This document shows, piece after piece, positions 7,637 through 63,988 of a stretch of 64,000 nucleotides of DNA. Source of the DNA: Macrostomum lignano (lineage: Eukaryota); contig NIVC01000952.1 in the NCBI GenBank assembly GCA_002269645.1, positions 1-64,000 of the forward strand, given 5' to 3'. A program made the position numbers and the translations under genes. The first letter of the stretch is position 1, and every line of letters starts with the position of its first letter. Below the pieces are notes generated by a model. It saw nothing but the letters and a program-made list of their open reading frames with translations, did not search any database and was not told the origin of the DNA.

Positions 7637-7698
7637 TGAATGCTCTTAAGGGAGCCACTTTGAAACCCATACAGCTGCAATAAAAGCAGCAGGCGGAT

Positions 7699-25900: not shown

Positions 25901-28900
25901 CTCGAATCCCACACCGACTCGAATCCCACATTAACTCGAATCCCACACTGACTCGAATCCCTCAGATTCGAATCCCACATTAACTCGAATCCCACACCGA
26001 CTCGAATCCCACATTAACTCGAATCCCACACTGACTCGAATCCCACATTAACTCGAATCCCACACTGACTCGAATCCCTCAGATTCGAATCCCACATTAA
26101 CTCGAATCCCACACCGACTCGAATCCCACATTAACTCGAATCCCACACTGACTCGAATCCCACATTAACTCGAATCCCACACCGACTCGAATCCCACATT
26201 AACTCGAATCCCACACTGACTCGAATCCCACAGATTCGAATTCCACATTAACTCGAATCCCACAGATTCGAATCCCACATTAAATCAAATCCCAAACTGA
26301 CTCAAATCCCACACCGACTCGAATCCCACACTGATTAAAATTTTAAGCTCATAGAACCTCATATTTTAATCCCAAAGATCCGGAAACGCAATTGAATCTG
26401 AAAAACTAACTACCCAAACTAACTTGTCAATAGGAAAAAATCCATGGCCAGCGGAGGCGCTTTCGGTTGCCAGGCCGTTGCTAGGCAGCCGCAGGATCAG
26501 CAAGGCGAAGCTCTGCATGCCTGACGGATCCGTGACTCGCACCGACAGGTCCAGGCGGCCGCCAGCCCGCGCCATCAGCCGGCCCGCTGCCGTGCCGTTC
26601 AGGACGCACAGCTGGCCGGTGCGCGGCTCCAGCCGAAAAGCGGATTCGAACTCGCGACCGTACCAGCTGGCTGTAGGGTTGACGGCGAAGTCAAAGTTCA
26701 GCACGGAGCCGCAGTCTGGGTCGAAGGCCGATACCCGAGCGACGCAGGCGCCGTCGGTGAGCGAGGCGAGGGAGACGGCAGCGGTGAACACCGGGCGGTG
26801 GAAGCGGGGCGGGAAGGCGGCCGAGCTGCTGACAGTGACTGTCAGAGTGGCGTTCCCAGTCAGCGGCGGCCTGCCGCAGTCGGTAGCGCCGAGCAGTACT
26901 GAGAGGCTGCCGCACAGCAGCCAGCTGCCACCGGCGCCGTCGGCCAGCGACACCCAACCGGTGGCAGAGTCGATCTCCAGTGCGCCACCGCCGCCGCTCA
27001 GGATGGCGTAGGTCACCGGGTCGCCATCCGGGTCGACAGCCGACACCTGCAAGAGACGCCTGGCGCCGGTCCCGTCGCTGGTCGATGCGGCGGTGACGGC
27101 GGCTTGGTAGGCGGGCCGCGCGAACACCGGGGCGCGCTCGTTGCGCAGCTGGACGGTCAGGTTGAGCAGCAGGCTGGCCGACAGCGGCGGCGCACCGGAG
27201 TCCGTGGCCGTGAGCGAGAGGGTGAACTGGCCGGGCGACAGGCGCGAGGCCACCTGAGGGGCGTCAGGATAGTGAGAGGAGAATTCAGATCATTGACTGA
27301 TGCGCCAAACACATTGATACCTGTTTGATGACTCATTGAGTGGTCAAATGCTGAAGGATTAAAGTCAGCCTTGCTCTGCGACGCGTCTAAGCTCCCGTGC
27401 TTAAGTACGAGTAGCTAAGGATTGTTTCTGGAAAATGATTGCAGCCCCGGCTTGTCTTGCGACCCAAATCTGAGGGCTAATCTCTCTTCATAGATGAGTG
27501 TACTTTGCTTGTTGATGAGGATGGCAAAAGTTGCTTGTGCTGTGTCTCCGTAAGCATCCGCACTCCATAGCGCACCTCCTGGGACTCAGGCCACTACGAG
27601 AGATGATCTGTCCCCTTAGTATGAACTGTATGGACTTATTGAACTCAGATCAGCTTAAAATCACATAGGGAGTCAATATATTTCAGCCTTTTCAGTGGTT
27701 TCCTAGAAGAGCAGATGCTTTTCTTAGCAGAGACAACTACTTGTAGATTTTGTCTTAACTTGTCGAATGAGCACTAGAGTTACATTTCGTCTAGGGCAAA
27801 AATTGCGAAACTAGAACTTGCAACCTATTGATAACAGCCAAACAAATTTCACACAATTTTTTCCGTGCAAAATCTGAAATGGACTTGACTAGCGAAGGCA
27901 TCAGCGAAGCCGCATCATCGCCCAGTCTGTGCGACTTTCGACGCTGTGCAGCCGCTGGCGATGCGCATTTTCGGCTTCCACCGGATGACGGAAGCTCCTC
28001 TGTCGACGCCTTCAACGCTGACACCCCGTTGAGCTGCAAACGGTCCCCAGATCGAAGCAGAAAGACCTATAAGCTTACTCGATTCAGCACTGCGGAAGTT
28101 TGCCTGACCCCGGACTTGCAGCAGGCGGTTGTCAGGTCACGGTCAGCTGTGGATTCAAGGCCTCGCTCAGAGAGTTCAGTTGTATCGTCACTGAACGAGA
28201 AAGCGACTGCAAGCAGGAGGACTCACTGCTTCTTCGAGAGTATCTTCCTCAGGAGTCTGCCGGTTACTCCAGCTAGGGAAGTATCTCACAATTTGCTGCT
28301 CGAGTCCTGCACACCTATGCCAACGCCAGTGGAGACAGACAGACCAGTAATCAAGACAGTGAGGAAGCATTGGTGCATCGTGTTTTGTAGCTCAACTCCG
28401 GCACAGGTGCTACCATCGCCAAGGTCGTACTTGGTCCCGTCGAATCTCGACTGTCCCTGCAAGCATCACTGCATTGACTGTCATACTGGTGACGCCATCG
28501 ATTGGCCATCGAGTGAACAAAACATTCTGCAGAAGTGCAGTTCAATGACACGCCGCGTCAACCGCAGCTTTCGGTATGCTCTCCAGCAACAAATAACCCG
28601 CGTCTCTGACGACCCATCACCTGTCTTGGCCGTAGAATTCAAGGAGGAATTCAACCTTCAGCTGGAGCTGCTGTACCAGCAACCACAGAGCTGGCAAAGC
28701 TGTGCAGAGTCTACAAGCGAGTCAATTTACCTACAACCGGCTGTTTCTCGGCGAGAAAAAGTACTTTTCTACTGTGAGCTTTCCGACTGTGACGAGACTG
28801 TGACGGACTGGCAGATGGCTGCATTTTACAAGCTGAAATGTCACCCCATGACTGCACGTTGCATCAGGGAGAAACCGACTGCGTCATCGGATTGGCGAAT

Positions 28901-31900
28901 GGAGCAATGGCGCATACAGTGCAACGAGCCACAGTGCGCACCTCTTACTGAGGTCCTGCATCCGGCTTTGCATTACTCAAGTGGAGCCAGTACTGGCGAC
29001 TGCGGCTGCACTACCGACTGTCAGCAGATGAAGCCTCAGTGGCCGCCTGCACCTGATCCACATTCATCACATCGAACTCGCGACAGCGACTGCTGCACAT
29101 CAGTTAGCTACTCAAATGTGCACTCAGCACCAGAACGACGTGTAGACAAGAGATGGCGGCAGCGTCGGCGAGCTCCCTCGGATTCACCGTCAGCTTCGGC
29201 GGTCTCAACTCAGTCAGCAGAGACCGAATCAGCCGTACTGCATACGGCCATTGCAAGAGGCGGATTCGACCACCTTCTGCAGACGCTGGAGAGGGCGAGA
29301 CTGCGGTACAGCGGCTCTGCTGTCTCTGCAACTTTCTCCTGTCCAGGGACGGGTAGTGGACGACGTCGCCGGAGGCAGCAGAGCAAGGCGTGCAGCTTTC
29401 AGACATGCCATGCAACCTGCGATCTTGGCCTCGAAAATGACAGAAATGAATTAGAGATTGAAGACGAAGATGTCGAGGAGTCTGAGCTTGAGAACACGCA
29501 GGTACTCGACGGAAACCAGTCGAACTTCGAAGACAACGACTGCAGCGATGAGTTTTGTGCCTGCGACACTCAATATTGCAGCTGCAACTTTAGAACTTGT
29601 TGCTGCGAAGGCGACTATCAGTGCAATGACGGTCTCGCAGAGCCGTCTGTGCAGCCTCTTATCGACCATTCGACCGCATCTCAGCGGGAGCGCCGGGAGG
29701 CGAAAATCATCGACTCCATGTCGCAGTCGCTGCTCACGCTAACGAAGAGCTTGGAGTCGTGCGTGCGTCACATTCGCGGCACAGTGGCGGAGCTGCAGCG
29801 ACTCTGATTCCGCATTATAGATATTAGACCCACTGCTACAAATTTATTTACCAATAAGTCCACTTACATGAGCTTTACATATTGTTTGTTGCAGTACGGT
29901 ATAGTCATTTTCTCTACCTTTATAAATAAAAGAGCTGCCGATGAGATATTCAAAGCTGAACTGCCCTCTTAAGCTTTTTAATGAGGCCGAATTCAGTCCG
30001 ATTTTCTTGACTGGGTCGCCATCATAAACCCGAAAAATCACAACCCTGAAAGCAATTCCCATCATAAACTCGAAATATCATAAACCTGAAATATCCCAAA
30101 CCCGAAATATCACAAACCCGGAATATCATAACTCCGAAAACCGAAATAGTTTTGGACTGTTATAACTTTCGGAGTTATGATATCTCGGGTTTATGATGGG
30201 CAATGCTATTTTTGTTTTCGGAGTTGTGATTTCTCGGGTTCGTGATGGAAAGCGCTTTTCGGAGTTGTGATTTTTCGGGTTTGTGATGCCCCCCCTTGAC
30301 TTGACTTGCTCTACCTGGAATCGAGAGTTGTTTAGTTTAAGCACGCACTTGACTTCGCCTTAAAATGCTTTGCAAGGACGCGAATCCCAATAAAATACAT
30401 AAAATTTAGCAGACAAGAGCGCCAGCGTTGTATGACTAGTGCTGATTTCCGAGTGGCAATGACTTTCGGGGAGGTTCCTATGCTGCATCGAAACAGTTTG
30501 ACCGGTTATAAACTTTTTATACAGCAGCTGGTATACCTTTGTTTGATAGGTGCACAGATACTTTTTGTGTGGTTGAGTATGTGTTAAGCAATTGCCCCGA
30601 GAAAATTGAAATAAATCTATTGAGCAACAACACAATCAATGACAAGAATCTTTGATCGAAGTGCCAGATCATTAATCGAGGTGTCAGATCATTAATCGAG
30701 GTGTCAAATCATTGATCGGGGTGTCAGATCATTGATCGAGGTGTCAGATCATTAATCGAGGTGTCAGATTATTGATCGAGGTGTCAGATCATTAATCGAG
30801 GTGTCAGATCATTGATCGGGGTGTCAGATCATTGATCGAGGTGTCAGATCATTAATCGAGGTGTCAGATTATTGATCGAGGTGTCAGATCATTAATTGAG
30901 GTGTCAGATCATTTATCGAGGTGTCAGATCATTTATCGAGGTGTCAGATCATTGATGGAGGCGTCAGATCATTAATCGAGGTGTCATATCATTGATAAAG
31001 GTGTCAGATCATTGATCGAGGTGTCAGATCATTAATCGAGGTGTCAGATCATTGATCGAGGTGTCAGATCATTGATGGAGGCGTCAGATCATTAATCGAG
31101 GTGTCAGATCATTGATCGGGGTGTCAGATCATTGATCGAGGTGTCAGATCATTGATCGAGGTGTCAGATCATTAAACGAGGTGTCAGATCATTAATCGAG
31201 GTGTCAGATCATTGATCGAGGTGTCAGATCATTAATCGAGGTGTCAGATCATTAATCGAGGTGTCAGATCATTGATCAAGGTGTCAGATCATTGATCGAG
31301 GTGTCAGATCATTGATCGAGGTGTCAGATTATTGATCGATGTGTCAGATCATTGATCGAGGTGTCAGATCATTGATCGAGGTGTCAGATCATTGATCGAG
31401 GTGTCAGATCATTGATCGAGGCGTCAGATCATTGATCGAGGTATTGAGGTGTCAGCTCATTTGATAAGATGTCAGTTCATTGAGCGAGACGTCAGGCCCA
31501 TTGCGGTTCTCACCTGCAGCACGTAGAGGTTGACATCCAGAGGCGCCAGCCTGAAGTACTCCGGACACTGGGCGGCGCCACCCGCCAGCTGGCAGGCCAG
31601 CGTCAATTTCACTGGTTCTCCGGGCCTGTCCGGGTCGGCCGCCTGCACTCGGAACACCGGTTGACCCACTGGTGTCACCTGGGTCAGGTCGGCGCTGCCC
31701 AGTCTGGTGGCCGAAATCGATGGCGGCCGGTCGTTGACGTCCAAGACGCGCACCAGCAGGTTGGCGCTGTTGGAATTGGCGCCATCCGACGCCAGCAGGA
31801 CCAGCGAGTGGGCGCGCTTGGTCTCGAAGTCTAACTGGCCGGCCAGGCGGACAATCCCGGTGTCCGGCTCCACTGAGAACAGGCGGCTAGACTCGGACAC

Positions 31901-32710
31901 CCCGTGCTCGATGCTGTAGCTCACAATGCCGAACACCCCGGCGTCCCGATCGGTGGCCCGCACCTGGAGCAGCCGGGAGCCAACAGTGGCGTTCTCCAGC
32001 ACGTCCAGGCTGTAGCGAGTCTGCTCAAACACCGGCCGCTCATCGTTGGCGTTCTCCACGATCACAGTGACACCGGCCGAGCCGGTCAGGCCGCGCTTAT
32101 CCGTGGCAACCAGCCGCAGGCGGTGCTCAGCTGCCGACTCGAAGTCCAGCGGGGCGAGCAGCTCCAGCAGCAAGTCGGAGCGGGCCGGCCTGGCGGGCTG
32201 CTGGCGGAGCCGGAGGCGGAACCGGTGCTCGGCGTTACCAGCGGTGATCTCCACTCGGTCGAGGCCGTTCTCCGCCGAGTCAGCGTCCTCCACGAAGCCC
32301 AAGGACAGCTCAGTGGGGACAGCGACCGTCTCCAGCAGCCGCAGCCACAGGCTGGAGTTTGAGAAAGTTGGGGCGCAGTCGTTTTTGTCGTCGACTAGCA
32401 CGGTCACGTGACCGACCTGGCTGCCGCAGATGAAGTCGAAGCTGTAGGAAGCCTGGGCCTCGCGGTCCAGGGCTGCAAGAGTTCGAATCTGGCCGGTGCG
32501 CGAGTCCAAGCTGAAGCGGTCGCGCGGGATGCTGAAGGAGTTGTACACCTGGGCGCCGGCGCCGCCGCCACAGTCGCCGGAGTTCACAGAGCCAACAAGC
32601 AGGTCCGGCCGGTCTCCGTTCTCCTCAACATGGAAGGTGAAGTTGCTGGCTTGGCCGCTAGCGCCAGGGGGCGAGTGTAGCAGCGGCAGCAGCAACAGCA
32701 GCGGCAGCAT
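7699..32710 (-). CDS. ds: Dachsous protocadherin (9 exons, about 2968 aa)
   Basis: Signal peptide MLPLLLLLPLL, roughly two dozen cadherin repeats (DRE, DxNDNxPxF, AxDxG motifs) and a TM segment (GIGGGVLGVVALIAVAVLLAVLG). The cytoplasmic motifs SSSGRGS and WTPQYQPLASVFAEIAQLKD are typical of Dachsous/DCHS. Phase-compatible GT-AG exons: 32710-31514, 27253-26424, 25435-22249, 21466-20914, 16227-15276, 14487-14037, 10256-9819, 9498-8416, 7914-7699 (sum 8907 nt, divisible by 3). Confidence 0.9.
7985..8390. repeat. G-rich minisatellite (GGGTGACTGG-based), ds intron 8
   Basis: Tandem copies with unit-length variants. Confidence 0.9.
8416..9498 (-). CDS. ds: Dachsous exon 8 (last cadherin repeats, TM, proximal cytoplasmic tail)
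   Basis: IEDVDEFRP, TM helix, SSSGRGSS; acceptor cctcag|GTG, donor CAG|gtttgc. Confidence 0.85.
9552..9792. repeat. 28-bp minisatellite, ds intron 7
   Basis: GACATGTGACArGCGGATGTGAwTGACT, about 8 copies. Confidence 0.95.
9819..10256 (-). CDS. ds: Dachsous exon 7
   Basis: LEVTDVNDNAPEF; acceptor ccgcag|CTC, donor GAG|gttggt. Confidence 0.85.
10510..11050. repeat. Polypurine GA-rich repeat
   Basis: GGAGAGGAT/GGAGAGGAA/GGAGAGGAG units. Confidence 0.95.
11655..11800. repeat. Polypyrimidine CT tract
   Basis: CTCTCTC-rich low-complexity sequence. Confidence 0.9.
12465..12830. repeat. 16-bp minisatellite (CTGGAATCTTCACAAA)
   Basis: About 22 tandem copies. Confidence 0.95.
13280..13870. repeat. 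21-bp minisatellite (CCGATACCCAAAGACAGGTGC variants)
   Basis: Tandem copies with higher-order variant blocks. Confidence 0.93.
14037..14487 (-). CDS. ds: Dachsous exon 6
   Basis: RPLDRELAASWRLTAVCEDNGQPRLTASAELT; acceptor tctgcag|G, donor ACG|gtgagg. Confidence 0.8.
14548..15295. repeat. 84-bp higher-order minisatellite (35+14+35) overlapping the ds exon 5 donor site
   Basis: About 9 units; each 35-bp subunit contains CAG|GTGTGT on the minus strand. Confidence 0.95.
15276..16227 (-). CDS. ds: Dachsous exon 5
   Basis: VLNVDDCAPVF cadherin motif; acceptor ctcccag|GT, donor CTTAG|gtgtgt. Confidence 0.85.
16870..17420. repeat. Polypurine GA-rich repeat
   Basis: GAGAGGAGAT/GAGAG units. Confidence 0.93.
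18658..20900. repeat. 22/24-bp minisatellite, 2.2 kb
   Basis: ACTGTGTCAGCACCCTGTAACACT (24 bp) mixed with ACTGTCAGCACCCTGTAATATT (22 bp). Confidence 0.97.
20914..21466 (-). CDS. ds: Dachsous exon 4
   Basis: VDVEIVDQNDHRPEF cadherin motif; acceptor gcgcag|GTA, donor TCTG|gtgagg. Confidence 0.85.
21525..22225. repeat. Degenerate ~22-24-bp minisatellite (TTCTATGGGCGGATAGGGGGCG)
   Basis: Fills most of ds intron 3. Confidence 0.93.
22249..25435 (-). CDS. ds: Dachsous exon 3
   Basis: 1080-aa ORF of cadherin repeats; acceptor cccccag|A, donor GAG|gtgcac. Confidence 0.9.
25485..26335. repeat. 14/16-bp minisatellite with TCGAATCCCAC core
   Basis: Fills most of ds intron 2. Confidence 0.95.
26424..27253 (-). 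CDS. ds: Dachsous exon 2
   Basis: Cadherin repeats; acceptor cctcag|GTG, donor GACAA|gttagt. Confidence 0.85.
27879..29807 (+). CDS. Intronless Ser/Cys-rich orphan protein, copy A (nested antisense in ds intron 1)
   Basis: Open 659-codon ORF. The ATG at 27879 aligns with the ATG of copy B, and the frame is preserved between copies. No domain recognised. Confidence 0.65.
   Translation: MDLTSEGISEAASSPSLCDFRRCAAAGDAHFRLPPDDGSSSVDAFNADTPLSCKRSPDRSRKTYKLTRFSTAEVCLTPDLQQAVVRSRSAVDSRPRSESSVVSSLNEKATASRRTHCFFESIFLRSLPVTPAREVSHNLLLESCTPMPTPVETDRPVIKTVRKHWCIVFCSSTPAQVLPSPRSYLVPSNLDCPCKHHCIDCHTGDAIDWPSSEQNILQKCSSMTRRVNRSFRYALQQQITRVSDDPSPVLAVEFKEEFNLQLELLYQQPQSWQSCAESTSESIYLQPAVSRREKVLFYCELSDCDETVTDWQMAAFYKLKCHPMTARCIREKPTASSDWRMEQWRIQCNEPQCAPLTEVLHPALHYSSGASTGDCGCTTDCQQMKPQWPPAPDPHSSHRTRDSDCCTSVSYSNVHSAPERRVDKRWRQRRRAPSDSPSASAVSTQSAETESAVLHTAIARGGFDHLLQTLERARLRYSGSAVSATFSCPGTGSGRRRRRQQSKACSFQTCHATCDLGLENDRNELEIEDEDVEESELENTQVLDGNQSNFEDNDCSDEFCACDTQYCSCNFRTCCCEGDYQCNDGLAEPSVQPLIDHSTASQRERREAKIIDSMSQSLLTLTKSLESCVRHIRGTVAELQRL
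30020..30288. mobile_element. Foldback-like element with internally repetitive inverted arms
   Basis: Left arm CATCATAAACCCGAAAAATCACAAC and tandem ATCAyAAACCCGAA units face the right arm TTCGGAGTTGTGATTTTTCGGGTTTGTGATG. No clear TSD. Confidence 0.6.
30650..31445. repeat. 20-bp minisatellite (GTGTCAGATCATTGATCGAG)
   Basis: About 40 copies. Confidence 0.97.
31514..32710 (-). CDS. ds: Dachsous exon 1 (signal peptide and first cadherin repeats)
   Basis: ORF 31472-32710; donor CAG|GTGAGA. Confidence 0.9.
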
Positions 32711-33649
32711 AGTGCGTCAGAGTGTCATGCCATGCCAGCAAGTTGCCGACAGTCAAACCGCTGGAACACAGGGGCGGGCCCGAGAATGACTTAATAGCCC
32801 CACGGTTGGGCCGGCAGTGCGTCAGGGATTGGCGCCCACACGGATCGGCGGCAGAGCCAATCAGAAAGGCTTGAGACGGAAAACTTATTCTCGTTCGATT
32901 CATTCGTCACCTTACTAGCCCTCTGGGGCGAGTGTGCGAGATAGAGGAGAGCCAGACTGCCTGTACAACCCCTGTCTACATCTTTGCTAGATCCTCATCT
33001 GCTGCTCAGCTCGAGCTCATTTCTGCCCCTCTCTTTTGCGACTTTGGCGAGCGAGGCAAGCGAGCGATAGATAAGATTGGGGTCAGGGGGAATCACATTT
33101 AGGACTCGAAGGCTTCGCTTGGCTACCGGAGACTGACAGACAGAGTGACGAACAGTGCCTACTGATTGGGTCGATCGGGGGGAACTGCCGAGGTCCCGGG
33201 CCGCAGCAGCCGCCCCTCCCGCCTGCTCTGTAATTCAAAGACGCGAGAGGGAGAGGTGGAACTGAGGATGAGGCGAGATCAGGAGGAGGGATTACTCAGC
33301 TTCCGATTTTGCGGCTAAGCAAGCCTCCTCAATCCCACACAACCCCACTCGCCATGAGAGTCTGAGAGCAGAGCGCAGTGAGAGGAAAACGCGAGCTTAT
33401 TCCAGATGGGAGGGAGCTCTGTAGCGAATCTTGAGTGATTTTTTTCAAACATCCTTGAGTAAGGAAGAATAGAGAGCGAAATTGCGAACTAGCTAGACTT
33501 TTTTATCACCGTCAGAACTGTGCGGAATTCTAGAGAAAATATTCAGAGCTTGGAAGATTGCAAAAAGAGCTTGGTAAAAAGTGAGTTGCTACTCACTTTT
33601 TAATGCAAAAATCCTATTCATGCAACACTGCAACACTGATCTAGCTGGC

Positions 33650-34175
33650 ACCTCTGTCACCTTGGGAATTCCCTATGATCCAGCTTGCATCTCTGTCACC
33701 TTGGGAATTCCCGGTGATCCAGCTTAAATCTTTGTCACCTTGGGAATTCCAGATGATCCAGCTTAAACCTCTGTCACCTTGGGGAATTCCCCGGTGATCC
33801 AGCTTGCATCTCTGTCACCTTGGGGAATTCCCCGGTGATCCAGCTTGCATCTCTGTCACCTTGGGGAATTCCCCGGTGATCCAGCTGAAATCTTTGTCAC
33901 CTTGGGAATTCCAGATGATCCAGCTTAAACCTTTGTCACCTTGGGGAATTCCCCGGTGATCCAGCTTAAACCTTTGTCACCTTGGGGAATTCCCCGGTGA
34001 TCCAGCTTGCATCTCTGTCACCTTGGGGAATTCCCCGGTGATCCAGCTTGCATCTCTGTCACCCTGGGAATTCCCGGTGATCCAGCTTGCATCTTTGTCA
34101 CCTTGGGAATTCCCCGGTGATCCAGCTTGCATCTTTGTCACCCTGGGAATTCCCGGTGATCCAGCTTGCATCTGC
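33650..34175. repeat. 39-41-bp minisatellite with internal palindrome GGGGAATTCCCC
   Basis: About 13 copies. Confidence 0.95.
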
Positions 34176-35337: not shown

Positions 35338-35388
<51 letters not shown>

Positions 35389-35413
35389 ATCTGTCTGTTT
35401 GTTTGTCTGTCTC

Positions 35414-35450
<37 letters not shown>

Positions 35451-35511
35451 TTGTCTGTCTCTCTGTCTTTCTGTCTGTCTGTCTGTCTGTCTGTCTGCCT
35501 GCCTGCCTGCC

Positions 35512-35585
<74 letters not shown>
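35338..35585. repeat. (CTGT)n microsatellite
   Basis: About 60 tetramers. Confidence 0.97.
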
Positions 35586-35586
<1 letters not shown>

Positions 35587-38500
35587 GTCAGCTTGTTGAA
35601 TGAACATTAGTAAATTTATAAACGATGCATTTTAGATGCAGTCAAGAATAATCTGAACATGTAGCTTGAATTACTAGTTCTAATCCAAGCATCCTCTACA
35701 ATGGTGCATGCCCCGCAGTTCCTGATTAAATGAACGCGGCAAACCAACCGAAAACACAGCATACCCGGTACACAGATGTTTTTCTAACTACCAGAGCTTC
35801 TTAATTGCTGGCGAGTTTATGTAGCAGCCTCACACGTGGCCATTATATGGGCAGCTGGCTGGGCACTACAGAGCCTTTCAATGCTGTTCCAGCCTCGAGT
35901 ATTCAGAGGCTTGAACGGAAACCCACCACAGCGAGGCCAGCGGTAGCGGCCAGAGCCTTATTAGATCGAGCCTTCGTACAGCAGGGGGGATTCATTAAGG
36001 TGCAAATAGCGGCTAAAATGCTATCGCGCAGAAAACTAGTGATGAGCAGAGCAAAGCACGGCACAGACACATGTCAATCGAATGCACAGACAGCACTGCT
36101 TGGTTGAATTCACAGAACTGCAATATGCAACATTATGAACAAGAGGCATCCAACATGCATGTTCTCATTGTTAAGTCTTTCAAAAGACTGAATGTTGAAA
36201 ATATTGGCTCTAAAAAATTCCCATGTAGAAAATAAAAATATTGCTCTATCTACTCATAGTACCTATGAGTAGTATTATGAACTATAGATTAGTTATATCA
36301 TGATAAGTAAGCTTCAAAAACTTACAAATAGGCCGAATCTGTTTGTCTGTAGTAAGTAAACAAGCTGATTTTCTTGCTTTGAAAACAAGCAATAAACATG
36401 CTTTTTCCAATAGTGACTTATGTTTCAAGTTACTTGTATGTAAATGTTGCCTGAATTGACTTGTATAGGCCTATTACATATGTTGCTATTAGTGATTTGT
36501 ATTTAAAGTTTGGCTATAGTGACCTATATATATATACTAATAGAAATAGCCAAGTGAATCCAAAAGTTTTATACCTATGCTTTTGCTATTTGAAATGTTT
36601 TTTTCATGAAATTTAGGCTCTATCTAGAGAAGGCTATTGATAAAATTGTGGCTTGGATATATTTAGCATAGGCCCAACAATTAAAGTAGATTCTAGATTC
36701 ATTCATGTGCTTATAAATAATAAGTCCCATAGGTATCAAGGTATTAGATTATTGTTGCTATCTAAAAATATTTTTAGCTAAGAACTAAAGGTCTTAAATA
36801 ATAAAAGCTTCTTATAATAAAGGATTTTATAACATTTAGTTTAAGCCAATGTTTGGCTAAATTTTTAACTATAAGACTAAGGGCCCAAAAGAGGAGAATG
36901 GAGAATAGAAAAGAAAGGAAAAAAGAAGAAGGGAGAAAAAGAGAGGAGAAGGGAGAGGAAAGAAGAGGGGAAGAAGAAAAGAAAAAGAAGCTATAAGATA
37001 AGACATAAGCCTTAGGTGATTACTATTGTAGTTTAATAGACTCAAGGACTAGAAAAAGAGGCTTTGTGGGCCATATAGGACCCATAGGGTAGAGTTGCCA
37101 AGCCAACCCATAGTTTAAACCTAGATATTAATTAGTTAAAATCAGTTTAATACTTTAAATTTTAATTTTTAGAAATTGACTTTAAGCTTGTCATTAAGAC
37201 TAAAAAATAATATTCAATTTCTCAATTTTAAACAAGAATCATTTAGAATTAAAACTTAAAGTATAAAATATCTAATTTAATAATGGTAATAAACATTAAT
37301 GATATTCATTTATTTTTATATATAATAATTTATAATTGTATTTTATGACAAACAAATTGCTTTTAAACTAATGAACAAAAACATATATATATATATAGGC
37401 CCCTACGTTAAATAAAAAGGCAAAGGGACAAGTAAACCTTTGCTAAAATATAGATTAGCTTTCCTAGACCTAAGGCCTAGGGCTAGGGTTGAAACCATAT
37501 AAGAATTATTTGCCTTATCAAATTGCTAGTTTTATGACTTTTTTCTAGGCTATACCAGTATATATAATTTAAATGTTTAATCCAACTTAAAGAATGCTAC
37601 TGTATATATTTTATATAGTATTAAACATGTGTTATAAACTTGGCCAGTCTCCCAGACAAAGGTCAGTCAGTACCAATAGATAGGGCCTAATACTATACTA
37701 GGAAATAGGCCTATCCACTTGAATATGTCAATGAATGGCATTTTAAAAAGCCTTAAACAGTGTTAAAGGAAAATATAAATTTAAGTTTAACTAAAGTCAA
37801 GATTGTATTGACAGCATGGGAAATAACAAAATAGCAAGTTCTACATATAAAATTAAGAATAATAAAGCAGTTCATAGGTCTATTCATATATATTTTAAAC
37901 TAGATCTAGCTGACTCAAATACTGAATTATTTAATATAGGCCCTACTCTCTAGCTATTGCGGTCGAAATCGAAATGCATTGGCAAAAGTCTAAGAAACTA
38001 AAATGTTGATTTTGAGTTTCCTCTACTTAATTGTTGTGAAGCGAGGAACCCTACCGGGATCTCTAGCTATAATCTACATCGGCGATTATTAATTTAATAA
38101 TTAACCATTGAGGATTTGGAGCCCATAAGGCATAACACCAACATACAGTTGGCCTTCTCTCTGCACGCACACACGTGGACCGACTTCCAAGAATACAGAA
38201 AAGTCAAAATTTTGCTATGTGGAAGATAACGACAAAACAACAAATTTTAATGTCAATCATAATTAAATATGTATCGCGAGATTTTTACTTCTCGGAAGGA
38301 TTTCGAGCTAATATGCAAATGCAACGCATTATGCGTGCAATTATGGGAACGCATCTAATAATTGGCAACAGTGCAACTATTTTTCATTACATGTTGGTCC
38401 AATCGTACATGCTCAATTATTGTACAGGGCCGGTTACGACAGGTGTAGCATGGGTCTACACTACATACATGTATTTAAGGACCGAGTGCAAACACTGAAA

Positions 38501-39040
38501 CTGCGGCAGTGACAGTCGTGTAACACAAAAAATCAACCGAGATTTTTGAAAATCATCCGAAAGCGTGACAAATTGCCATCACGGGATGGTCCAGCATGTA
38601 AAAGGACAAATTATAGAGTGCTCCGATGAACAGTGGTCAGTGGGACAATTGACGAATCTCAGGCGTTGTTGAACGCTACAGAATGGAAAATTATAGCAAG
38701 TCACTCTGCATGAGTGCTCTAGCACCCCACATAGCAAGTACGAATGATTCGAATATTCTCTAGAAGGGCTTGCCTGTCAATTGGCGATGCAAACGAGCAT
38801 GCCTGAAGGTAGAACGCGAGGCAAACATGTACACTTTTAGAAGGAGACGTATGGGTTGCATATTTACGAAGTGATTTTTGTACAAAACAAAAAATCAAGG
38901 GACTTTTCGGCCAACTGGTTACTGATTAGATGAACAATGAATTAAGCGGCAGTCTTATTAGCCATGCAGAGATCAGCAAAGTGCATTCAGCACAATAAAC
39001 AGGGCAGCTGGATTGAGCACGCTAACAAGCCACAAACTGC

Positions 39041-39279
39041 TCAGTAGGGCCTGTAACCATCACGCTCGTTCAGCACCTGCCAATCGAATGTCCAGCCGCA
39101 GGATTCGGTTCGAAAGATGCTCCACAATTTGAGTGCAGCTGCCACCAGAATTGCCACCACAACGAGCCATAAAAGCCACCGACCAGCGGGTAAAAATTGC
39201 TCCCAAGGTTGCTGAGAGATCTCCAGGCCGCTGGCAGTGGCCGGCCAGTACTGACCAGGCATCGCCTGGGGCGGCAGTG

Positions 39280-39310
<31 letters not shown>

Positions 39311-40106
39311 TTGTTGTTGCTCTCGCCTCTGCATGGAGCCTGCTAGTAAGTTTAAGCAGAATACAGTAAAATGTTTTATAGTGATTCAGTGTTTATAACC
39401 CATATAGTGATTCAGCATACAGCTTCGAACTCACCAATTGCAGTCCTGTGCTGCTGCCCGTCCTTAGAGGCCAGAAATAGGCAAATTCGGCTCTGGCACA
39501 GTTCAAACTCGCAGCTCAGTGGGTAGTCCAGCCTGTCGGCCAGTGCGCCCAGAGTCTCCGCCAGCTGACCGAGTCGACGAGCCCTGTTGAAAAGATCCGT
39601 GTGAAATTACTAACAGTGAGTTCAATTAGCATCTAGAACATGAATAAATGGACTTAAATGAACGCCAATGCCAAGTTCTTGCAAAATTTATTGATCTTTG
39701 CTCCGGTTGCGACTCACTCAGTTCCAACATCCGGGTCGCCGCGGTCGACTTCGTCGGCAAACTTGATCACGTGACGCAGGAAGGCGGCCTCCAGCCGGCA
39801 GACCAGCCGTTCAACTGCTCGGCTGCGCTGCAGCCACAGCTGGGAGGTGTCCGCCAGCATCCGGCGCCATCGACGAGTTCGATCGGCATCGGCGGACTCG
39901 GCCTGGATGGATACGGTTGAGTAGGCCGCTCTCAGCGATTCGCAATCGATTTCATCGGCGGCCAGCTGCAAGCAGTCGGCGTGGATCTCGGCGATGCCCG
40001 GCAGAGCCGACCGGTAGGAGGCATCGCGATTGGCCAGGCTAGCCAGGGAGCTCGACAGGTGCAGTCGCATGTGGCTGACGTCCCGATAGTGGCTCTCAGC
40101 TGCCAT
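39041..40106 (-). CDS. Tail-anchored protein, KASH/nesprin-like (3 exons, 278 aa)
   Basis: Exons 40106-39718, 39583-39435 and 39339-39041 join in phase (GA|gtgagt..caacag|G; G|gtgagt..tagcag|GC), totalling 837 nt. Helical N-terminus, poly-Q, TM WLLWLVVVAILVAAAL and a ~29-aa tail ending GYRPY. Confidence 0.7.
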
Positions 40107-41473
40107 GCCTTTGCTGGTTTTGCTGTCAAAAATTATTTACAAGCTTTAAGCTAGCTTCGTTTGAGACTCGATCCCATGGATCTCCGCTGCACTGCACTGC
40201 AGTGCGGTGGCTCTAGAAATGGCTTACGCTCGTAGTTGAAGAAGCGGGTTAAGCCATAAACCAAAAACTACCAAAAGGAGCTGGATTCCGTGACACAAAT
40301 GAAATAATCAGAGTGTAGGAAATTCAAAGTCAAGTTCCGCGTTCTCATGTGCGCTTTAATTGGCTGAGAGAAAATTTTTTCGTGGAAATGTTACTTAATA
40401 TATATGGAGGCGTCTTGTCTATGGCCTGCCTCGCCCAATGAAATGACTTGGGTGATTGGGTAAGTTCCTTTTTTGGGCTCCAGGAGACTCCAGGAGAGAG
40501 AGCGGAGGGGAAGACTCGACAGGAGAGAGAGCGGAGGGGAAGACTCCAAGAGAGAGCGGAGGGGAAGACTCCAGGGAGATAGTTTATGAGACCTGAGATA
40601 TATCTGACTCTGCTGAAAGAGTAACCTTTAGCTTTAACCATCATATATTTCTTTTTCTATTTTCAGAAAAAGACTACCTCTCGGCGGCTGCTTGTGTTGA
40701 GTTTTTATCTCATCCTACGAGTCGTATGCATCACTGTGTGCGGCTAGCTGCCTATGAGCCAGCTCCCATGAGCCCCTGGAGTCTACCCTGACCATGAGCT
40801 GACTGCCACCCCAGTACACCCAGCTATCGTTTTCATCGCGCTTTATCGAGCTGTCATTTTGCGCTTAAATTTAGTTGCATATCTTAAAAATCACCTTTCG
40901 GGCTCGCTTTTGTCCTCTCCACTTCTGATTGGCTGTTGCATGGCGTGGTCCGTATTAATTTCATCCTCAACATCAGTCGTTGCTTGCTGATTGGATAGGT
41001 TTTAGTGGACCCCGTAGCTTCGCTCGCTTCTTCACTGAGGTTCAGCCCTATTTTTGGGCAATATCCAATGAACTCTCACTGCTACCGCTGTTCCAGGCTA
41101 GTAAGAGTCTGTGATTGCGTTCACGCCGGCGTTAGCCCAGTTTAAACTTCTTTAGACATCGATCTTCGACAGAAGAAAAAAACAGCGTTGTACGACCACA
41201 CCTGATCTAAACATACTGAACCAGCTACGTACGTAGAACTGTAATTTGTTCTTTTTAAGGCTCTCCTTCAGAAAAAAGATTGCTTATTAGGACTGTGCTG
41301 GCTACAATGCAAAAACTTCTGTGACAACTGGGACCCTAGCTTGTAAAACATCAGATAAGCGAGGATTCTGGTTGTTTATATAGTTTAGGGTTCAACTTTG
41401 ACACGTATCCAAGAATGCTCTAAAATTAAGTTAAATTTACGCAGCAAAGCTGAAGTTATGCAGTGCTTAAAAG

Positions 41474-43411
41474 ATGTACTTCAACAGCGAAGGCATCAGC
41501 GAAGCCGCATCATCGCCCAGTCTGTGCGACTTTCGACGCTGTGCAGCCGCTGGCGATGCGCATTTTCGGCTTCCACCGGATGACGGAAGCTCCTCTGTCA
41601 ACGCCTTCAACGCTGACACCCCGTTGAGCTGCAAACGGTCCCCAGATCGAAGCAGAAAGACCTATAAGCTTACTCGATTCAGCACTGCGGAAGTTTGCCT
41701 GACCCCGGACTTGCAGCAGGCGGTTGTCAGGTCACGGTCAGCTGTGGATTCAAGGCCTCGCTCAGAGAATACAGTTGTATCGTCACTGAATGAGAAAGCG
41801 ACTGCAAGCAGGAGGACTCACTGCTTCTTCGAGAGTATCTTCCTCAGGAGTTTGCCGGTTACTCCAGCTAGGGAAGTGTCTCACAATTTGCTGCTCGAGT
41901 CCTGCACACCTATGCCAACGCCAGTGGAGGCAGACAGACCAGTAATCAAGACAGTGAGGAAGCATAGGTGCATCGTTTTTTGTAGCTCAACTCCGGCACA
42001 GGTGCTACCATCGCCAAGGTCGTACTTGGTCCCGTCGAATCTCGACTGCCCCTGCAACCTTCGCTGCATTGACTGTCCGACTGGAGACGCCATCGAATGG
42101 CCATCGAGCGCACAAAACATTCTGCAGAAGTGCAGTTCAACGACACACTGCGTCAACCGCAGCTTTCGGTATTCTCTCGAGCATCAAATTACATCCCGCG
42201 TCTCTGACGACCCATCACCTGTCTTGGCCGTAGAATTCAAGGAGGAATTCAACCTTCAGCTGGAGCTGCTGTACCAGCAACCACAGAGCTGGCAAAGCTG
42301 TGCAGAGTCTACAAGCGAGTCAATTTACCTACAACCGGCTGTTTCTCGGCGAGAAAAAGTACTTTTCTACTGTGAGCTTTCCGACTCTGACGAGACTGTG
42401 ACGGACTGGCAGATGGCTGCATTTAACAAGCTGCAATGTCCCCCCGTGACTGCACGTTGCATCAGGGAGAAACCGACTGCGTCAGCTGATTGGCAAATGG
42501 AGCACTGGCGCATACAGTGCAACGAGCCACAGTGCGCACCTCTCACTGAGGTTCCGTGTCCGGCTTTGCATTACTCAAGTGGAGCCAGTACTGGCGACTG
42601 CGGCTGCACTACCGACTGTCAGCAGATGAAGCCTCAGTGGCCGCCTGCACCTGATCCACATTCATCACATCGAACTCGCGACAGCGACTGCTGCACATCA
42701 GTTAGCTACTCAAATGTGCACTCAGCACCAGAACGACGTGTAGACACGAGATGGCGGCAGCGTCGGCGAGCTCCCTTGGATTCACCGTCAGCTTCGGCGG
42801 TCTCAACTCAGTCAGCAGAGACCGAATCAGCCGTACTGCATACGGCCATTGCAAGAGGCGGATTCGACCACCTTCTGCAGACGCTGGAGAGGGCGAGACT
42901 GCGGTACAGCGGCTCTGCTGTCTCTGCAACTTTCTCCTGTCCAGGGACGGGTAGTGGACGACGTCGCCGGAGGCAGCAGAGCAAGACGTGCAGCTTTCAG
43001 ACATGCCCTGCAACCTGCGATCTTGGCAGCGAAAATGATAGAAATGAATTAGAGATTGAAGACGAAGATGTCGAGGAGTCTGAGCTTGAGAACACGCAGG
43101 TACTCGACGGAAACCAGTCGAACTTCGAAGACAACGACTGCAGCGATGAGTTTTGTGCCTGCGACACTCAATATTGCAGCTGCAACTTTAGAACTTGTTG
43201 CTGCGAAGGCGACTATCAGTGCAATGACGGTCTTGCAAAGCCGTCTGTGCAGCCTCTTATCGACCATTCGACCGCATCTCAGCGGGAGCGCCGGGAGGCG
43301 AAAATCATCGACTCCATGTCGCAGTCGCTGCTCACGCTAACGAAGAGCTTGGAGTCGTGCATGCGTCACATTCGCGGCACAGTGGCGGAGCTGCAGAGCT
43401 GCAGCGAATAA
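41474..43411 (+). CDS. Intronless Ser/Cys-rich orphan protein, copy B
   Basis: 645-aa ORF, highly similar to 27879-29807; the only internal indel seen is 3 bp. Confidence 0.65.
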   Translation: MYFNSEGISEAASSPSLCDFRRCAAAGDAHFRLPPDDGSSSVNAFNADTPLSCKRSPDRSRKTYKLTRFSTAEVCLTPDLQQAVVRSRSAVDSRPRSENTVVSSLNEKATASRRTHCFFESIFLRSLPVTPAREVSHNLLLESCTPMPTPVEADRPVIKTVRKHRCIVFCSSTPAQVLPSPRSYLVPSNLDCPCNLRCIDCPTGDAIEWPSSAQNILQKCSSTTHCVNRSFRYSLEHQITSRVSDDPSPVLAVEFKEEFNLQLELLYQQPQSWQSCAESTSESIYLQPAVSRREKVLFYCELSDSDETVTDWQMAAFNKLQCPPVTARCIREKPTASADWQMEHWRIQCNEPQCAPLTEVPCPALHYSSGASTGDCGCTTDCQQMKPQWPPAPDPHSSHRTRDSDCCTSVSYSNVHSAPERRVDTRWRQRRRAPLDSPSASAVSTQSAETESAVLHTAIARGGFDHLLQTLERARLRYSGSAVSATFSCPGTGSGRRRRRQQSKTCSFQTCPATCDLGSENDRNELEIEDEDVEESELENTQVLDGNQSNFEDNDCSDEFCACDTQYCSCNFRTCCCEGDYQCNDGLAKPSVQPLIDHSTASQRERREAKIIDSMSQSLLTLTKSLESCMRHIRGTVAELQSCSE

Positions 43412-44079
43412 GATTCAATCGTATATAGTTAGTATTTATCTCAATACCTGTCGCAAGTAACTTGCAGCGAAAGCCTACTGTATGAGTTGGTATATGAGCA
43501 TAAGTTTGTAAAGTATCATACATTTGTATTTCATTTTTTGATGAACAGCTGCAGACGAGTAAAAAAGAAAGCTGATTGTTGACTCGATCAGCCTTGATTT
43601 TTTATAACTGGAGGCAGCCATTTTTGGCAAGCAGCGAGGATTTTGGCTGTTCAAATCCAAGCTTTTGTTTTTCAAGGTCTAGATCCCTGTGCGAGCATAC
43701 ATACCACAATTTTATACCTTGTAGCTAATCCAAGTTGCTTTAGTTAGTGATTAATTGGATGTAGGCTTACAAATGGCCTCCTTAGGGCTTACCCAGGAGG
43801 GACTAGGCTTTCAAGACTCGAATGGCGCAAAACTGGTTGACTGCATTATGAACTTGATCGCTGAATTGTCCTCTTCGAACAAAATGTTCATTTTCTGGGG
43901 TGTATACGTGCACCCCATGCAATAGTAAATAGAGAACCATAATCTTAGTCATGCAGTGATCATGGTTGAAAACGAAGGAGAAAAGCGCCAAAATGAATTC
44001 AAGAAAGCGAATTTAAAGCGGAAATCCTGTAATTGTTTTTAAAACGCAAGTGTTTTTAAGGTATTATGTAGTTATTTAG

Positions 44080-47130: not shown

Positions 47131-47193
47131 GTAGTGGAATCGCTACCCATCAGACACCCAAGGTTATCCTGTCCGCACCGAACAAACCCCCTC

Positions 47194-59696: not shown

Positions 59697-63988
<4,292 letters not shown>

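What the first reader, a model, noticed from the sequence alone, without database searches (positions are those of the whole stretch)
27879..43411. Duplicated intronless orphan gene whose homology stops exactly at the ORF boundaries
Seen: copies at 27879-29807 and 41474-43411 are nearly identical from about the ATG (ATGGACTTGACTAGC vs ATGTACTTCAACAGC) to about the stop, but the flanks are unrelated by eye. Both ORFs are intact (one 3-bp indel). The protein has Cys clusters (CPCxxxCxDC; CSDEFCACDTQYCSCNFRTCCCEG), an acidic tract and a C-terminal helix, with no recognisable domain. Inference: CDS-limited identity suggests RNA-mediated copying or ongoing gene conversion of a young lineage-specific family, possibly of mobile or viral origin.
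Basis: partly seen in the sequence, partly recalled or inferred. Interest (0 to 1): 0.7.

Follow-up and report, generated by a model that had tools for sequence, protein, structure and literature searches.

The report
Flatworm orphan gene pair, coding-region homogenised
Two copies of a fast-evolving, flatworm-only gene lie 13.6 kb apart and are 97% identical only across the coding region, most likely because gene conversion re-homogenised two older paralogues; this is an ordinary kind of event with one unusual side lead.

Summary
The window is Macrostomum lignano contig NIVC01000952.1. Copy A (27879-29807) and copy B (41474-43411) are intact single-exon ORFs, 97.0% identical from the ATG to 9 nt before A's stop.

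- **Orphan status:** the protein matches only itself in 5.8 and 1.84 billion-protein searches. It has no Pfam, PDB, PHROG or viral relative. It is mostly disordered, Cys-rich, and ends in a confident 43-residue helix.
- **Not a recent segmental duplication, TE or retrocopy:** there is no poly-A, TSD or terminal repeat, and there are only two loci.
- **Dating:** synonymous divergence between A and B (0.03-0.04) equals that among three homeologous B loci, whose flanks are still about 95-97% alike.
- **Old edges:** the first 12 nt of the CDS and about 28 nt after the core are about 30% diverged. About 200 nt downstream keeps faint colinear homology (moderate evidence). Upstream there is none.

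Best reading (confidence 0.5): older paralogues whose coding core was homogenised by gene conversion around the time the homeologues split, followed by near-neutral drift (ω≈0.7).

Side lead: both copies carry a degenerate match to the spliced leader's 3′ end, 8-11 nt before the ATG (P≈0.001, found post hoc). This hints at an ancient retro-origin.

Interest is modest.

The parts
27879..29807 (+). Copy A: single-exon ORF of 642 aa (annotated as BOX15_Mlig012479g1-type). It is nested antisense in intron 1 of a FAT-like cadherin gene.
   Evidence: ORF. 100% match to PAA70540.1. The host gene span comes from the annotation, and the cadherin exons.
41474..43411 (+). Copy B: single-exon ORF of 645 aa (Mlig011834-type). 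It is intergenic, between a 278-aa gene on the - strand and an Fcf1 gene on the + strand.
27891..29798 (+). High-identity core in A. Its partner in B is 41486-43396. Identity is 97.4%, with one 3-bp indel.
27879..27890 (+). 5' edge zone (B: 41474-41485). There are 4 fixed A/B differences in 12 nt, and homology ends at the ATG.
29799..30012 (+). 3' edge and faint old homology in A. About 28 nt is clearly homologous at roughly 68%, followed by weak colinear similarity to about 30012. It spans A's stop and a 3'UTR-sized stretch.
   Evidence: 0/500 shuffles. (5-mer near-diagonal enrichment, P=0.03 and P<0.001). (global alignment P=0.0115).. (BLAST E=0.06, with controls at 0.45 or higher).
43397..43610 (+). 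The 3' edge and faint old homology in B. It begins with an 8-bp tandem duplication (43397-43404) that changes the C-terminus.
27851..27867 (+). Spliced-leader-like stretch upstream of A. It matches 13 of 17 positions of the 3' end of the M. lignano SL, and is followed by 11 nt and then the ATG.
   Evidence: The SL sequence is taken from PMC8629364. This was found post hoc and is a weak lead.
41444..41465 (+). Spliced-leader-like stretch upstream of B. It matches 18 positions of the last 23 of the SL, with small indels, and is followed by 8 nt and then the ATG.
28463..28600 (+). Hypervariable segment (B: 42058-42198) that includes the CPCxxxCxDC motif. It holds 21 substitution events across all lineages, 18 of them non-synonymous.
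29541..29624 (+). Codes for the Cys cluster, residues 555-582, with 9 Cys in 28 residues.
   Evidence: It is not confidently modelled (pLDDT 42-48).
29673..29801 (+). Codes for the C-terminal long helix, residues 599-641, which has a heptad-like hydrophobic spacing.
   Evidence: AF2 on the C-terminal fragment gives pLDDT 76-96. The same helix is seen in the full-length model.
31472..32710 (-). First coding exon, with signal peptide and cadherin repeats, of the host FAT-like cadherin gene. The next exon ORF is 26366-27253.
   Evidence: Pfam Cadherin and Cadherin_FAT4_N. The annotation gives a 2968-aa gene ending at window 32710.

Best explanation
A and B are paralogues of a Macrostomum-restricted, single-exon, fast-evolving gene. 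The duplication is older than the 3% divergence of the coding core suggests, and the original flanks have decayed or been replaced. The coding region was later homogenised, essentially end to end, by non-allelic gene conversion between the two linked, same-orientation copies. Whether the template was DNA or cDNA cannot be told. This happened at about the time the homeologous chromosomes of this hidden polyploid diverged. Conversion could not spread beyond the stretch that was still similar enough, so short old edges were left behind. Since then every copy has drifted almost neutrally under relaxed constraint.

Shown:
- the coordinates, and the sharp 5' border at the ATG
- the diverged edges
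- the equal synonymous distances
- the absence of retrocopy or TE hallmarks

Inferred:
- that conversion is the homogenising process
- that the faint 3' similarity is true old homology

The protein itself is inferred to be intracellular: it has no signal peptide, and an RRRRR run may act as a nuclear signal. It is largely disordered, has a possibly metal-binding Cys cluster, and ends in a coiled-coil-type helix for self-association. Its function has not been tested.
For: 1. **The core is young.** dS(A,B) is 0.031-0.043, which equals dS among the three B homeologues (0.025-0.042). The three lineages have equal branch lengths of 24, 25 and about 28 events.
2. **B-locus flanks between homeologues are still about 95-97% alike**, while A and B flanks are unalignable. 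The flanks therefore do not share the core's age.
3. **The edges are far more diverged than the core.** There are 4 differences in the first 12 nt. About 28 nt after the core is roughly 68% identical and carries an 8-bp duplication.
4. **Faint colinear homology continues downstream.** It runs about 200 nt and then stops (k-mer P<0.001, alignment P=0.0115, BLAST E=0.06 against controls at 0.45 or higher). Synonymous sites would show that old divergence had they not been homogenised.
5. **Fixed A-versus-B differences are clustered.** There are 12 adjacent pairs against 2.7 expected, and a 573-nt stretch with none (P=0.005).
6. **The copies are 13.6 kb apart in direct orientation**, the arrangement in which ectopic conversion is most frequent (established knowledge).
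7. **Homogenising exchange happens in this locus.** The A-locus contigs are identical over 5.1 kb (24800-29900) but 2-5% diverged on either side.
8. **Flank turnover is fast here.** One homeologue carries an LTR retrotransposon about 600 nt upstream of B that the window lacks.
9. **Purifying selection cannot explain the identity**, because ω is about 0.7.
Against: - The old 3' homology has only moderate support (BLAST E=0.06). Upstream of the ATG there is none (P=0.15-0.8).
- Classical conversion needs homologous anchors, yet the converted tract reaches to within 12 nt of the end of detectable homology.
- No pair-specific conversion tract is significant.
- Columns 585-725 are hypervariable in all lineages, so part of the clustering may be selection or a mutational hotspot rather than unconverted islands.
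- With such weak codon constraint it is not obvious why alignability should have survived across exactly the CDS.
- No orthologues from other species were available for the classical phylogenetic test of concerted evolution.
Confidence: 0.5

Rival explanations
1. A young, one-step copy of only the coding region. About 3% divergence ago a segment running from the ATG to just past the stop was copied into a second site 13.6 kb away. The route could have been a processed transcript or cDNA used as a repair template, or a replication template switch. No older paralogy is involved.
For: - The 5' border lies exactly at the ATG, and upstream homology is absent.
- The A-B distance equals the homeologue distance, as a single event at that time would give.
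- No significant later conversion tracts are found.
- Local templated events would explain the proximity of the copies.
- Reverse transcriptase sources are abundant: LTR elements make up 21% of the genome (PMC5730564), and one lies next to B in a homeologue.
Against: - The edges should be as similar as the core, but they are about 30% diverged.
- The faint 3' homology of about 200 nt would be unexplained.
- There is no poly-A, no SL at high identity and no TSD beyond 5-nt matches.
- A's transcript has at least 36 nt of A-specific 5'UTR that B lacks (annotated 5'-partial models).
- Boundaries falling within a few nt of both ORF ends would be a coincidence for a DNA-level event.
Confidence: 0.2
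2. An ancient RNA-mediated origin followed by homogenisation. The ancestral unit was a retro-copied, spliced-leader trans-spliced mRNA made of an SL remnant, a 5'UTR of about 10 nt, the CDS and a 3'UTR of about 200 nt. A and B share only that transcript-shaped unit. The core was later homogenised as in the best explanation.
For: - Both upstream regions match the 3' end of the 35-nt M. lignano SL (quoted in PMC8629364), ending 11 nt (A) and 8 nt (B) before the ATG.
- Every one of the last 20 SL positions is matched by A or B, and their mismatches to the SL fall at different positions. P is about 0.001 with two nulls, and 0.0003 when positional concordance is included. Singly, P is 0.013-0.017.
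- The old homology is asymmetric in the way a transcript is: none 5' of that stretch, and about 200 nt on the 3' side.
- The gene is intronless.
- SL-tagged retrogenes are an established phenomenon in dinoflagellates (PMC6050394, PMC5585692).
Against: - The match was noticed by eye first, and the anchored statistic was chosen afterwards.
- Chance hits of equal or higher score exist elsewhere in the window, including inside the CDS.
- A-upstream and B-upstream do not align significantly with each other (P=0.06-0.15).
- There is no poly-A relic, and no intron-containing parent was found.
- Two retro-insertions 13.6 kb apart in a 760-Mb genome would be very improbable.
Confidence: 0.15
3. A mobile element or endogenous viral gene present in two insertions.
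For: - The unit is ORF-sized with unrelated flanks.
- The protein is an orphan.
- The genome is rich in repeats.
Against: - Only two loci exist, each also present in the homeologous contigs.
- There are no terminal inverted or direct repeats.
- There is no hit in Pfam, PHROGs, PDB or IMG/VR contigs, and none in an exhaustive HMMER search of 1.84 billion representatives.
- The GenBank annotation set excluded transcripts overlapping repeats (PMC5730564).
- There are no further fragments by tblastn.
Confidence: 0.03
4. Old paralogues whose coding identity is kept by purifying selection alone, or an assembly or annotation artefact.
For: - CDS-only alignability is what selection alone would give for old paralogues.
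- The assembly is known to be redundant, and one annotated model is an A/B chimera.
Against: - Synonymous sites are as similar as non-synonymous ones (dS 0.03-0.04, ω 0.5-0.9), so selection alone cannot hold 97% identity.
- Each copy, with its own flanks, is independently present in two or three other contigs, so neither copy is a mis-assembly.
Confidence: 0.03

Closest known systems
Concerted evolution of linked gene duplicates by ectopic gene conversion. Examples are the tandem arrays of Trypanosoma brucei (PMC1855330) and, from my own knowledge, the Drosophila Amy and hsp70 duplicates and yeast ribosomal-protein paralogues, whose coding regions stay near-identical while the flanks differ.
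   Same: - The copies are linked and in the same orientation.
- A near-identical coding block sits in unalignable flanks.
- Synonymous divergence is far below flank divergence.
- The block has diverged edges.
   Different: - In the classic cases the genes are highly expressed and strongly constrained, whereas this protein evolves almost neutrally (ω≈0.7).
- No conversion tract is detectable after the homeologue split.
- The species-level phylogenetic proof is missing.
Spliced-leader-tagged retrogenes of dinoflagellates (PMC6050394, PMC5585692).
   Same: - The gene is intronless.
- A leader-like remnant lies just upstream of the start codon.
- The organism trans-splices about 30% of its genes (PMC8629364).
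   Different: - The remnant here is short (17-23 nt) and 20-25% diverged from the leader, and its statistical support is modest.
- There is no poly-A relic and no parent gene.
- To my knowledge, which I have not checked exhaustively, this has not been described in flatworms.
Processed retrocopies made by LINE machinery.
   Same: - The copy is intronless.
- The flanks are unrelated.
- The unit is roughly transcript-sized.
   Different: - There is no poly-A tract and no target-site duplication.
- The copy lies 13.6 kb from its partner instead of at a random site.
- The UTRs are not shared at the identity of the core.
Lineage-restricted, rapidly evolving 'orphan' genes of Macrostomum. Non-conserved genes make up a large share of the gene set (PMC8629364), and reproduction-related genes evolve rapidly (PMC7336406).
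   Same: - There is no homologue outside the species in the databases searched.
- ω is high.
- The protein is disordered and of low complexity.
- Codon bias is low (GC3 0.58, against 0.83 in the neighbouring cadherin exon).
   Different: - The expression site is unknown. The gene IDs were not found in the supplements of three expression papers.

Membership tests
Concerted evolution by ectopic gene conversion | A high-identity tract is embedded in older, more diverged homology. | tested here: inconclusive
   This is met at the edges: the first 12 nt, and about 28 nt at the 3' end (0/500 shuffles). Support over about 200 nt of 3' flank is moderate (P<0.001 by k-mers, P=0.0115 by alignment, BLAST E=0.06). 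It is not met upstream.
Concerted evolution by ectopic gene conversion | Synonymous divergence inside the tract is much lower than neutral divergence outside it. | tested here: met
   dS is 0.03-0.04, against unalignable flanks or about 25% mismatch with many gaps.
Concerted evolution by ectopic gene conversion | Paralogues within a species are closer to each other than to their orthologues in related species. | not testable with these tools
   No other Macrostomum sequence is reachable. The protein searches return only M. lignano.
Concerted evolution by ectopic gene conversion | Statistically supported mosaic tracts between particular copies. | tested here: not met
   The longest-concordant-run permutation test gives A-B pairs P=0.07-0.26. 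Only the clustering of fixed differences is significant.
Processed retrocopy (LINE-type retroposition) | A poly-A tract at the 3' end of the copied unit. | tested here: not met
   No A-run is present after either copy or at the end of the faint 3' homology.
Processed retrocopy (LINE-type retroposition) | Target-site duplications flank the unit. | tested here: not met
   Only 5-nt matches are seen by eye, and the repeat finder reports nothing bracketing the units.
Processed retrocopy (LINE-type retroposition) | An intron-containing parent gene elsewhere in the genome. | tested here: not met
   All cluster members map to A-type or B-type single-exon loci. No further homologue exists.
Spliced-leader-tagged retrogene | A DNA-encoded remnant of the spliced leader lies directly upstream of the 5'UTR or start codon. 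| tested here: inconclusive
   There is no match within 3 mismatches. Degenerate matches anchored on the leader's 3' end occur upstream of both copies: singly P=0.013-0.017, jointly P about 0.001. These were found post hoc.
Recent segmental (DNA) duplication | The flanks are homologous at about the same identity as the gene. | tested here: not met
Transposable element or endogenous viral gene | Many dispersed copies, terminal repeats, or homology to TE or viral proteins. | tested here: not met

The most novel reading that the evidence does not exclude
Both copies descend from a retro-copied, spliced-leader trans-spliced mRNA. The degenerate leader remnant 8-11 nt upstream of each ATG, together with the transcript-shaped extent of the old homology, would be its fossil. 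That would make this an SL-tagged retrogene in a flatworm, a marker so far exploited mainly in dinoflagellates. It would also give a way to count and date retrogenes across trans-splicing animals.
Probability: 0.2. Interest if true: 0.6.

Novelty: new member of a known kind. Interest (0 to 1): 0.3.

Why it matters
The pair is a clean small example of how, in a repeat-rich hidden polyploid, a 97% identical coding block can sit in unrelated flanks without being a retrocopy or a mobile element.

It has a practical consequence. One GenBank gene model (PAA74360.1) is an A/B chimera spanning 15.6 kb, and read mapping or knock-down designs for this gene will cross-hit six or more near-identical copies.

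If the leader-like remnant is real, the same test applied genome-wide would show whether trans-splicing animals carry leader-tagged retrogenes.

Otherwise the finding is ordinary: a fast-evolving orphan gene pair of unknown function.

Tried and rejected
- **Protein identity.** Pfam, PDB sequences and PHROGs give nothing. The word-indexed search of 5.8 billion proteins and the exhaustive HMMER search of 1.84 billion representatives return only the protein itself. IMG/VR viral contigs give nothing.
- **Structure.** AF2 on the full length gives mean pLDDT 29, which is unusable. The C-terminal fragment gives only one confident helix. No fold search was run, because a single helix or a low-confidence model yields meaningless matches.
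- **Exact or near-exact spliced leader in the window:** none.
- **Rfam:** nothing in the window.
- **TE termini or TSDs around either copy:** none.
- **Antisense ORFs:** 103 aa at most, with no family.
- **Further diverged copies by tblastn** in the window and four other loci: none.
- **Expression data.** The IDs Mlig011834 and Mlig012479 are absent from the held supplements of PMC5816591, PMC7336406 and PMC12896417.
- **Recent conversion tracts:** not significant.
- **CDS-specific conservation among A loci:** rejected. The identical tract spans 5.1 kb and ignores the CDS bounds.
- **Purifying selection as the cause of the identity:** rejected on dS and ω.
- **Upstream old homology:** not found by any method.

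Full report
**Source and setting.** Locus L002, fetched through the annotated protein PAA74360.1, is 100% identical to window 17843-53411. Its record coordinates are the same numbers, so the window is positions 1-64000 of Macrostomum lignano contig NIVC01000952.1, assembly GCA_002269645.1. [quoted passage not shown] The DV1 assembly is known to be redundant, with 180 Mb in non-repetitive blocks at least 95% identical (PMC5730564). About 30% of its genes are trans-spliced to a 35-nt leader that ends in ATG (PMC8629364). Along the window lie:
- a GBP-like gene (3181-4602, - strand)
- a FAT-like cadherin gene of 2968 aa on the - strand, whose first coding exon is 31472-32710
- a 278-aa gene (- strand, about 39041-40106)
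- an Fcf1 gene (47034-47798, + strand)
- a SIK/MELK-like kinase (61834-63813, - strand)

Many minisatellites lie between them.

**Observation check.** Copy A (27879-29807, 642 aa) and copy B (41474-43411, 645 aa) are intact ORFs on the + strand. blastn gives one HSP, 27879-29798 against 41474-43396, at 97.04% with 54 mismatches and one 3-bp indel, and nothing else links the two neighbourhoods. The proteins share 603 identical residues. Local alignments of 60, 300 or 1000 nt of flank on either side score no better than shuffles. An extension anchored at the ATG and run upstream scores 0, while one started 15 nt inside the CDS runs exactly to the ATG (0/200 shuffles). The nuance on the 3' side is described under 'Edges and older homology'.

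**Other copies and dating.** The only relatives in 5.8 billion clustered proteins form one cluster of five M. lignano hypothetical proteins, BOX15_Mlig012479g1 and Mlig011834g1-3. An exhaustive HMMER scan of 1.84 billion representatives returns only that cluster. Their loci give three A-type copies (window, L001, L004) and three B-type copies (window, L003, L005). Each sits in the same flanking context as in the window, so both loci predate the divergence of these redundant or homeologous contigs.

| Comparison | Result |
|---|---|
| A copies with each other | 99.9-100% identical |
| B copies with each other | differ by 1.6-3.1% |
| A with B | differ by 2.7-3.6% |
| dS(A,B) | 0.031-0.043 |
| dS among B copies | 0.025-0.042 |
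| Branch lengths (A, B_win, L003/L005 lineage) | 24, 25 and about 28 events (a trichotomy) |

B-locus flanks between homeologues are still about 95-97% identical. The A/B core therefore coalesces about when the homeologues split, yet the A and B flanks do not share that age.

**Is it a gene, and what is the protein?** A 1.9-kb ORF cannot persist by chance. No substitution among 95 inferred events created a stop, where 4.1 are expected (P=0.016), and all three internal indels are 3 bp long. One B homeologue (L005) carries one in-frame stop. Codon-level constraint is weak: 28 synonymous and 67 non-synonymous events, ω≈0.7, P=0.08 against neutrality, with pairwise ω of 0.5-0.9. Relaxed constraint is expected where six or more copies coexist. 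Alignment columns 585-725, around the CPCxxxCxDC motif, are hypervariable in every lineage, with 21 events of which 18 are non-synonymous. The GenBank models are transcript-based and excluded transcripts that overlap repeats (PMC5730564). The 5'-partial A models show at least 36 nt of A-specific 5'UTR.

The protein has no Pfam, PDB or PHROG match. Its features are:
- 12.8% Ser, 8.6% Arg and 6.1% Cys (39 Cys)
- net charge -13
- an RRRRR run at residues 495-499
- an acidic tract starting near residue 525
- 9 Cys within residues 555-582

AF2 gives mean pLDDT 29 for the whole protein. For the C-terminal fragment it gives one confident 43-residue helix (pLDDT 76-96) with heptad-like hydrophobic spacing. 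By inference only, this is an intracellular and possibly nuclear protein that is largely disordered, has a possibly metal-binding Cys cluster, and has a coiled-coil-type C-terminus. GC3 is 0.58, against 0.83 in the neighbouring cadherin exon.

**Hallmarks of retroposition, transposition or viral origin.**
- No poly-A follows either copy. Only 5-nt direct matches sit at the junctions, and no inverted or direct repeats bracket either unit.
- The leader is absent at up to 3 mismatches.
- Antisense ORFs are at most 103 aa and have no family.
- No further fragments are found by tblastn, and no relative in IMG/VR contigs.
- The copies lie 13.6 kb apart in the same orientation. That is typical of local DNA-level events and very unlikely for random retro-insertion into a genome of about 760 Mb (inference).

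**Edges and older homology.** The first 12 nt of the CDS carry 4 fixed A/B differences, whereas the core is 97.4% identical. After the shared ...GAGCTGCAG, B has an 8-bp tandem duplication. Allowing for it, homology continues about 28 nt at roughly 68%, to A 29826, which is 19 nt past A's stop (0/500, 0/500 and 4/500 shuffles).

Further downstream, several tests agree moderately:
- Near-diagonal 5-mer matches are enriched in the first 100 nt (21 against 11.3, P=0.03) and in the next 100 nt (30 against 9.1, P<0.001), and not beyond. The nulls preserve local composition.
- A global alignment of A 29799-30028 with B 43405-43654 has about 75% identity in aligned columns, with many gaps (P=0.0115).
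- The segment A 29899-30012 / B 43518-43610 alone gives P=0.036, and there is nothing beyond it.
- BLAST with permissive scoring gives a colinear hit at E=0.06, against 0.45 or higher for five control comparisons.

Upstream of the ATG, none of these methods finds anything. The evidence for old 3' homology is therefore moderate, not conclusive. If it is real, the 97% block is a young core inside an older and much more diverged homology.

**Mosaicism.** Fixed A-versus-all-B differences are clustered: 12 adjacent pairs within 10 nt against 2.7 expected (P<0.0002), and a 573-nt stretch with none (P=0.005). Part of this clustering falls in the generally hypervariable segment. No pair-specific conversion tract is significant, so I see no ongoing A-B exchange since the homeologue split. 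Homogenising exchange does occur locally. The A-locus contigs are identical across 24800-29900 but 2% and 5% diverged on either side, a tract that ignores the CDS bounds. Flank turnover is rapid. In homeologue L003, an LTR retrotransposon with one intact 1257-aa ORF (protease, RT, RNase H, integrase) lies about 600 nt upstream of B and is absent from the window.

**Spliced-leader-like stretch.** The leader sequence quoted in PMC8629364 was compared with the 45 nt upstream of each ATG.
- Both regions contain a degenerate match that includes the leader's 3' end. In A this is 27851-27867 (13 of 17 positions), followed by 11 nt and the ATG. In B it is 41444-41465, followed by 8 nt and the ATG.
- Singly, these are at P=0.006 against window background and P=0.013-0.017 against composition-matched nulls.
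- Jointly, every one of the last 20 leader positions is matched by A or B, and their mismatches fall at different positions (P≈0.001-0.0015, or 0.0003 with positional concordance).
- Caveats: B's match was first seen by eye and the anchored statistic was chosen afterwards. Chance hits of score 11-13 exist elsewhere, including inside the CDS. The two upstream regions do not align significantly with each other.

I treat this as a lead with a probability of about 0.2.

**Mechanism.** The best-supported account, at confidence 0.5, is older paralogues plus homogenisation of the coding region by ectopic gene conversion, with either DNA or cDNA as template, at about the time of the homeologue split, followed by near-neutral divergence. 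It explains:
- the young synonymous distance
- the unalignable flanks
- the short, highly diverged edges
- the faint 3' homology
- the linkage and shared orientation
- the lack of retrocopy hallmarks

Its weak points are the very short anchors, the total absence of 5' homology, the weak codon constraint, and the missing cross-species test.

The rivals are:
- A young one-step copy of just the coding region (0.2). It is favoured by the ATG-exact border but contradicted by the diverged edges and the 3' homology.
- An ancient leader-tagged retro-origin followed by the same homogenisation (0.15).
- A mobile or viral gene (0.03).
- Selection alone, or an artefact (0.03). This is contradicted by dS and by the independent contigs.

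**Comparison with known kinds.** The pair behaves like classic concerted evolution of linked duplicates (PMC1855330; the Drosophila Amy and hsp70 cases and the yeast paralogues are from my own knowledge). It differs in that the protein is nearly unconstrained. It fails the defining tests of a LINE-type retrocopy, a recent segmental duplication and a TE or viral gene. The leader-tagged retrogene class (PMC6050394, PMC5585692) is a resemblance whose defining feature was tested with an inconclusive result.

**Verdict.** This is a new member of a known kind, and interest is modest (0.3). The annotated gene PAA74360.1, which spans 27843-43411, is an A-5'/B-3' chimera. The join lies inside 48 nt shared by both copies, at a weak GT..AG (A 28952 | B 42551), and is most likely a mapping artefact.

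Noticed in passing
window 27843-43411: The GenBank gene model PAA74360.1 (BOX15_Mlig011834g3, 656 aa) joins the first 371 residues of copy A to the last 301 residues of copy B across a 13.6-kb 'intron'. The join falls inside 48 nt shared by both copies, at a weak GT..AG, and is probably a multi-mapping artefact.
   Followed up: yes
window 24800-29900, against L001 and L004: The A-locus contigs are identical over about 5.1 kb but about 2% (upstream) and about 5% (downstream) diverged outside it. This is a homogenised tract between redundant or homeologous contigs, and it ignores the CDS bounds.
   Followed up: partly
L003 about 3858-9395 (ORF 5122-8895, - strand): One homeologous B locus carries an insertion, absent from the window, about 600 nt upstream of copy B. 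It is an LTR-retrotransposon-type element with one uninterrupted 1257-aa ORF (aspartyl protease, RT, RNase H, integrase) next to a 27-nt minisatellite.
   Followed up: partly
window 30013-30295: A block of nested inverted repeats, with 31-52-nt arms 75-90% complementary and built from 16-nt units, lies just downstream of where the A/B 3' similarity ends. It looks like a MITE or foldback. A 20-nt minisatellite follows at 30648-31442.
   Followed up: no
window 50139-50162 (+): This is the best spliced-leader-like sequence in the window (3'-anchored score 13). It lies inside the span of an annotated 191-aa gene. Whether it is chance or a relic was not examined.
   Followed up: no
window 1-73 and 4166-4238: A 73-nt inverted repeat, 99% complementary, has arms 4.1 kb apart at the contig start. 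It brackets most of a guanylate-binding-protein-like ORF (3181-4602, - strand; Pfam GBP E=3e-64).
   Followed up: no
whole window, e.g. 18658-20902, 58043-59685, 14551-15294, 50992-51828: The density of minisatellite arrays is very high (35 TRF rows with score of at least 200, units of 9-84 nt, up to about 98 copies). Many lie inside introns of the cadherin gene, and they create spurious long ORFs in several frames.
   Followed up: no
window 36000-38000: A 2-kb stretch has only 30% G+C, between the cadherin 5' end and the 278-aa gene. The window average is about 50%. It was not characterised.
   Followed up: no
window 61834-63813 (-): Exons of a SIK/MELK-like serine/threonine kinase (Pkinase E=1e-47, UBA_SIK3 E=1.5e-7) lie at the right end of the window.
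   Followed up: no
L005 9059-11017: One B-type homeologue has a single in-frame stop and is annotated only from an internal Met (338 aa, PAA70538.1). At least one of the six copies is decaying.
   Followed up: partly
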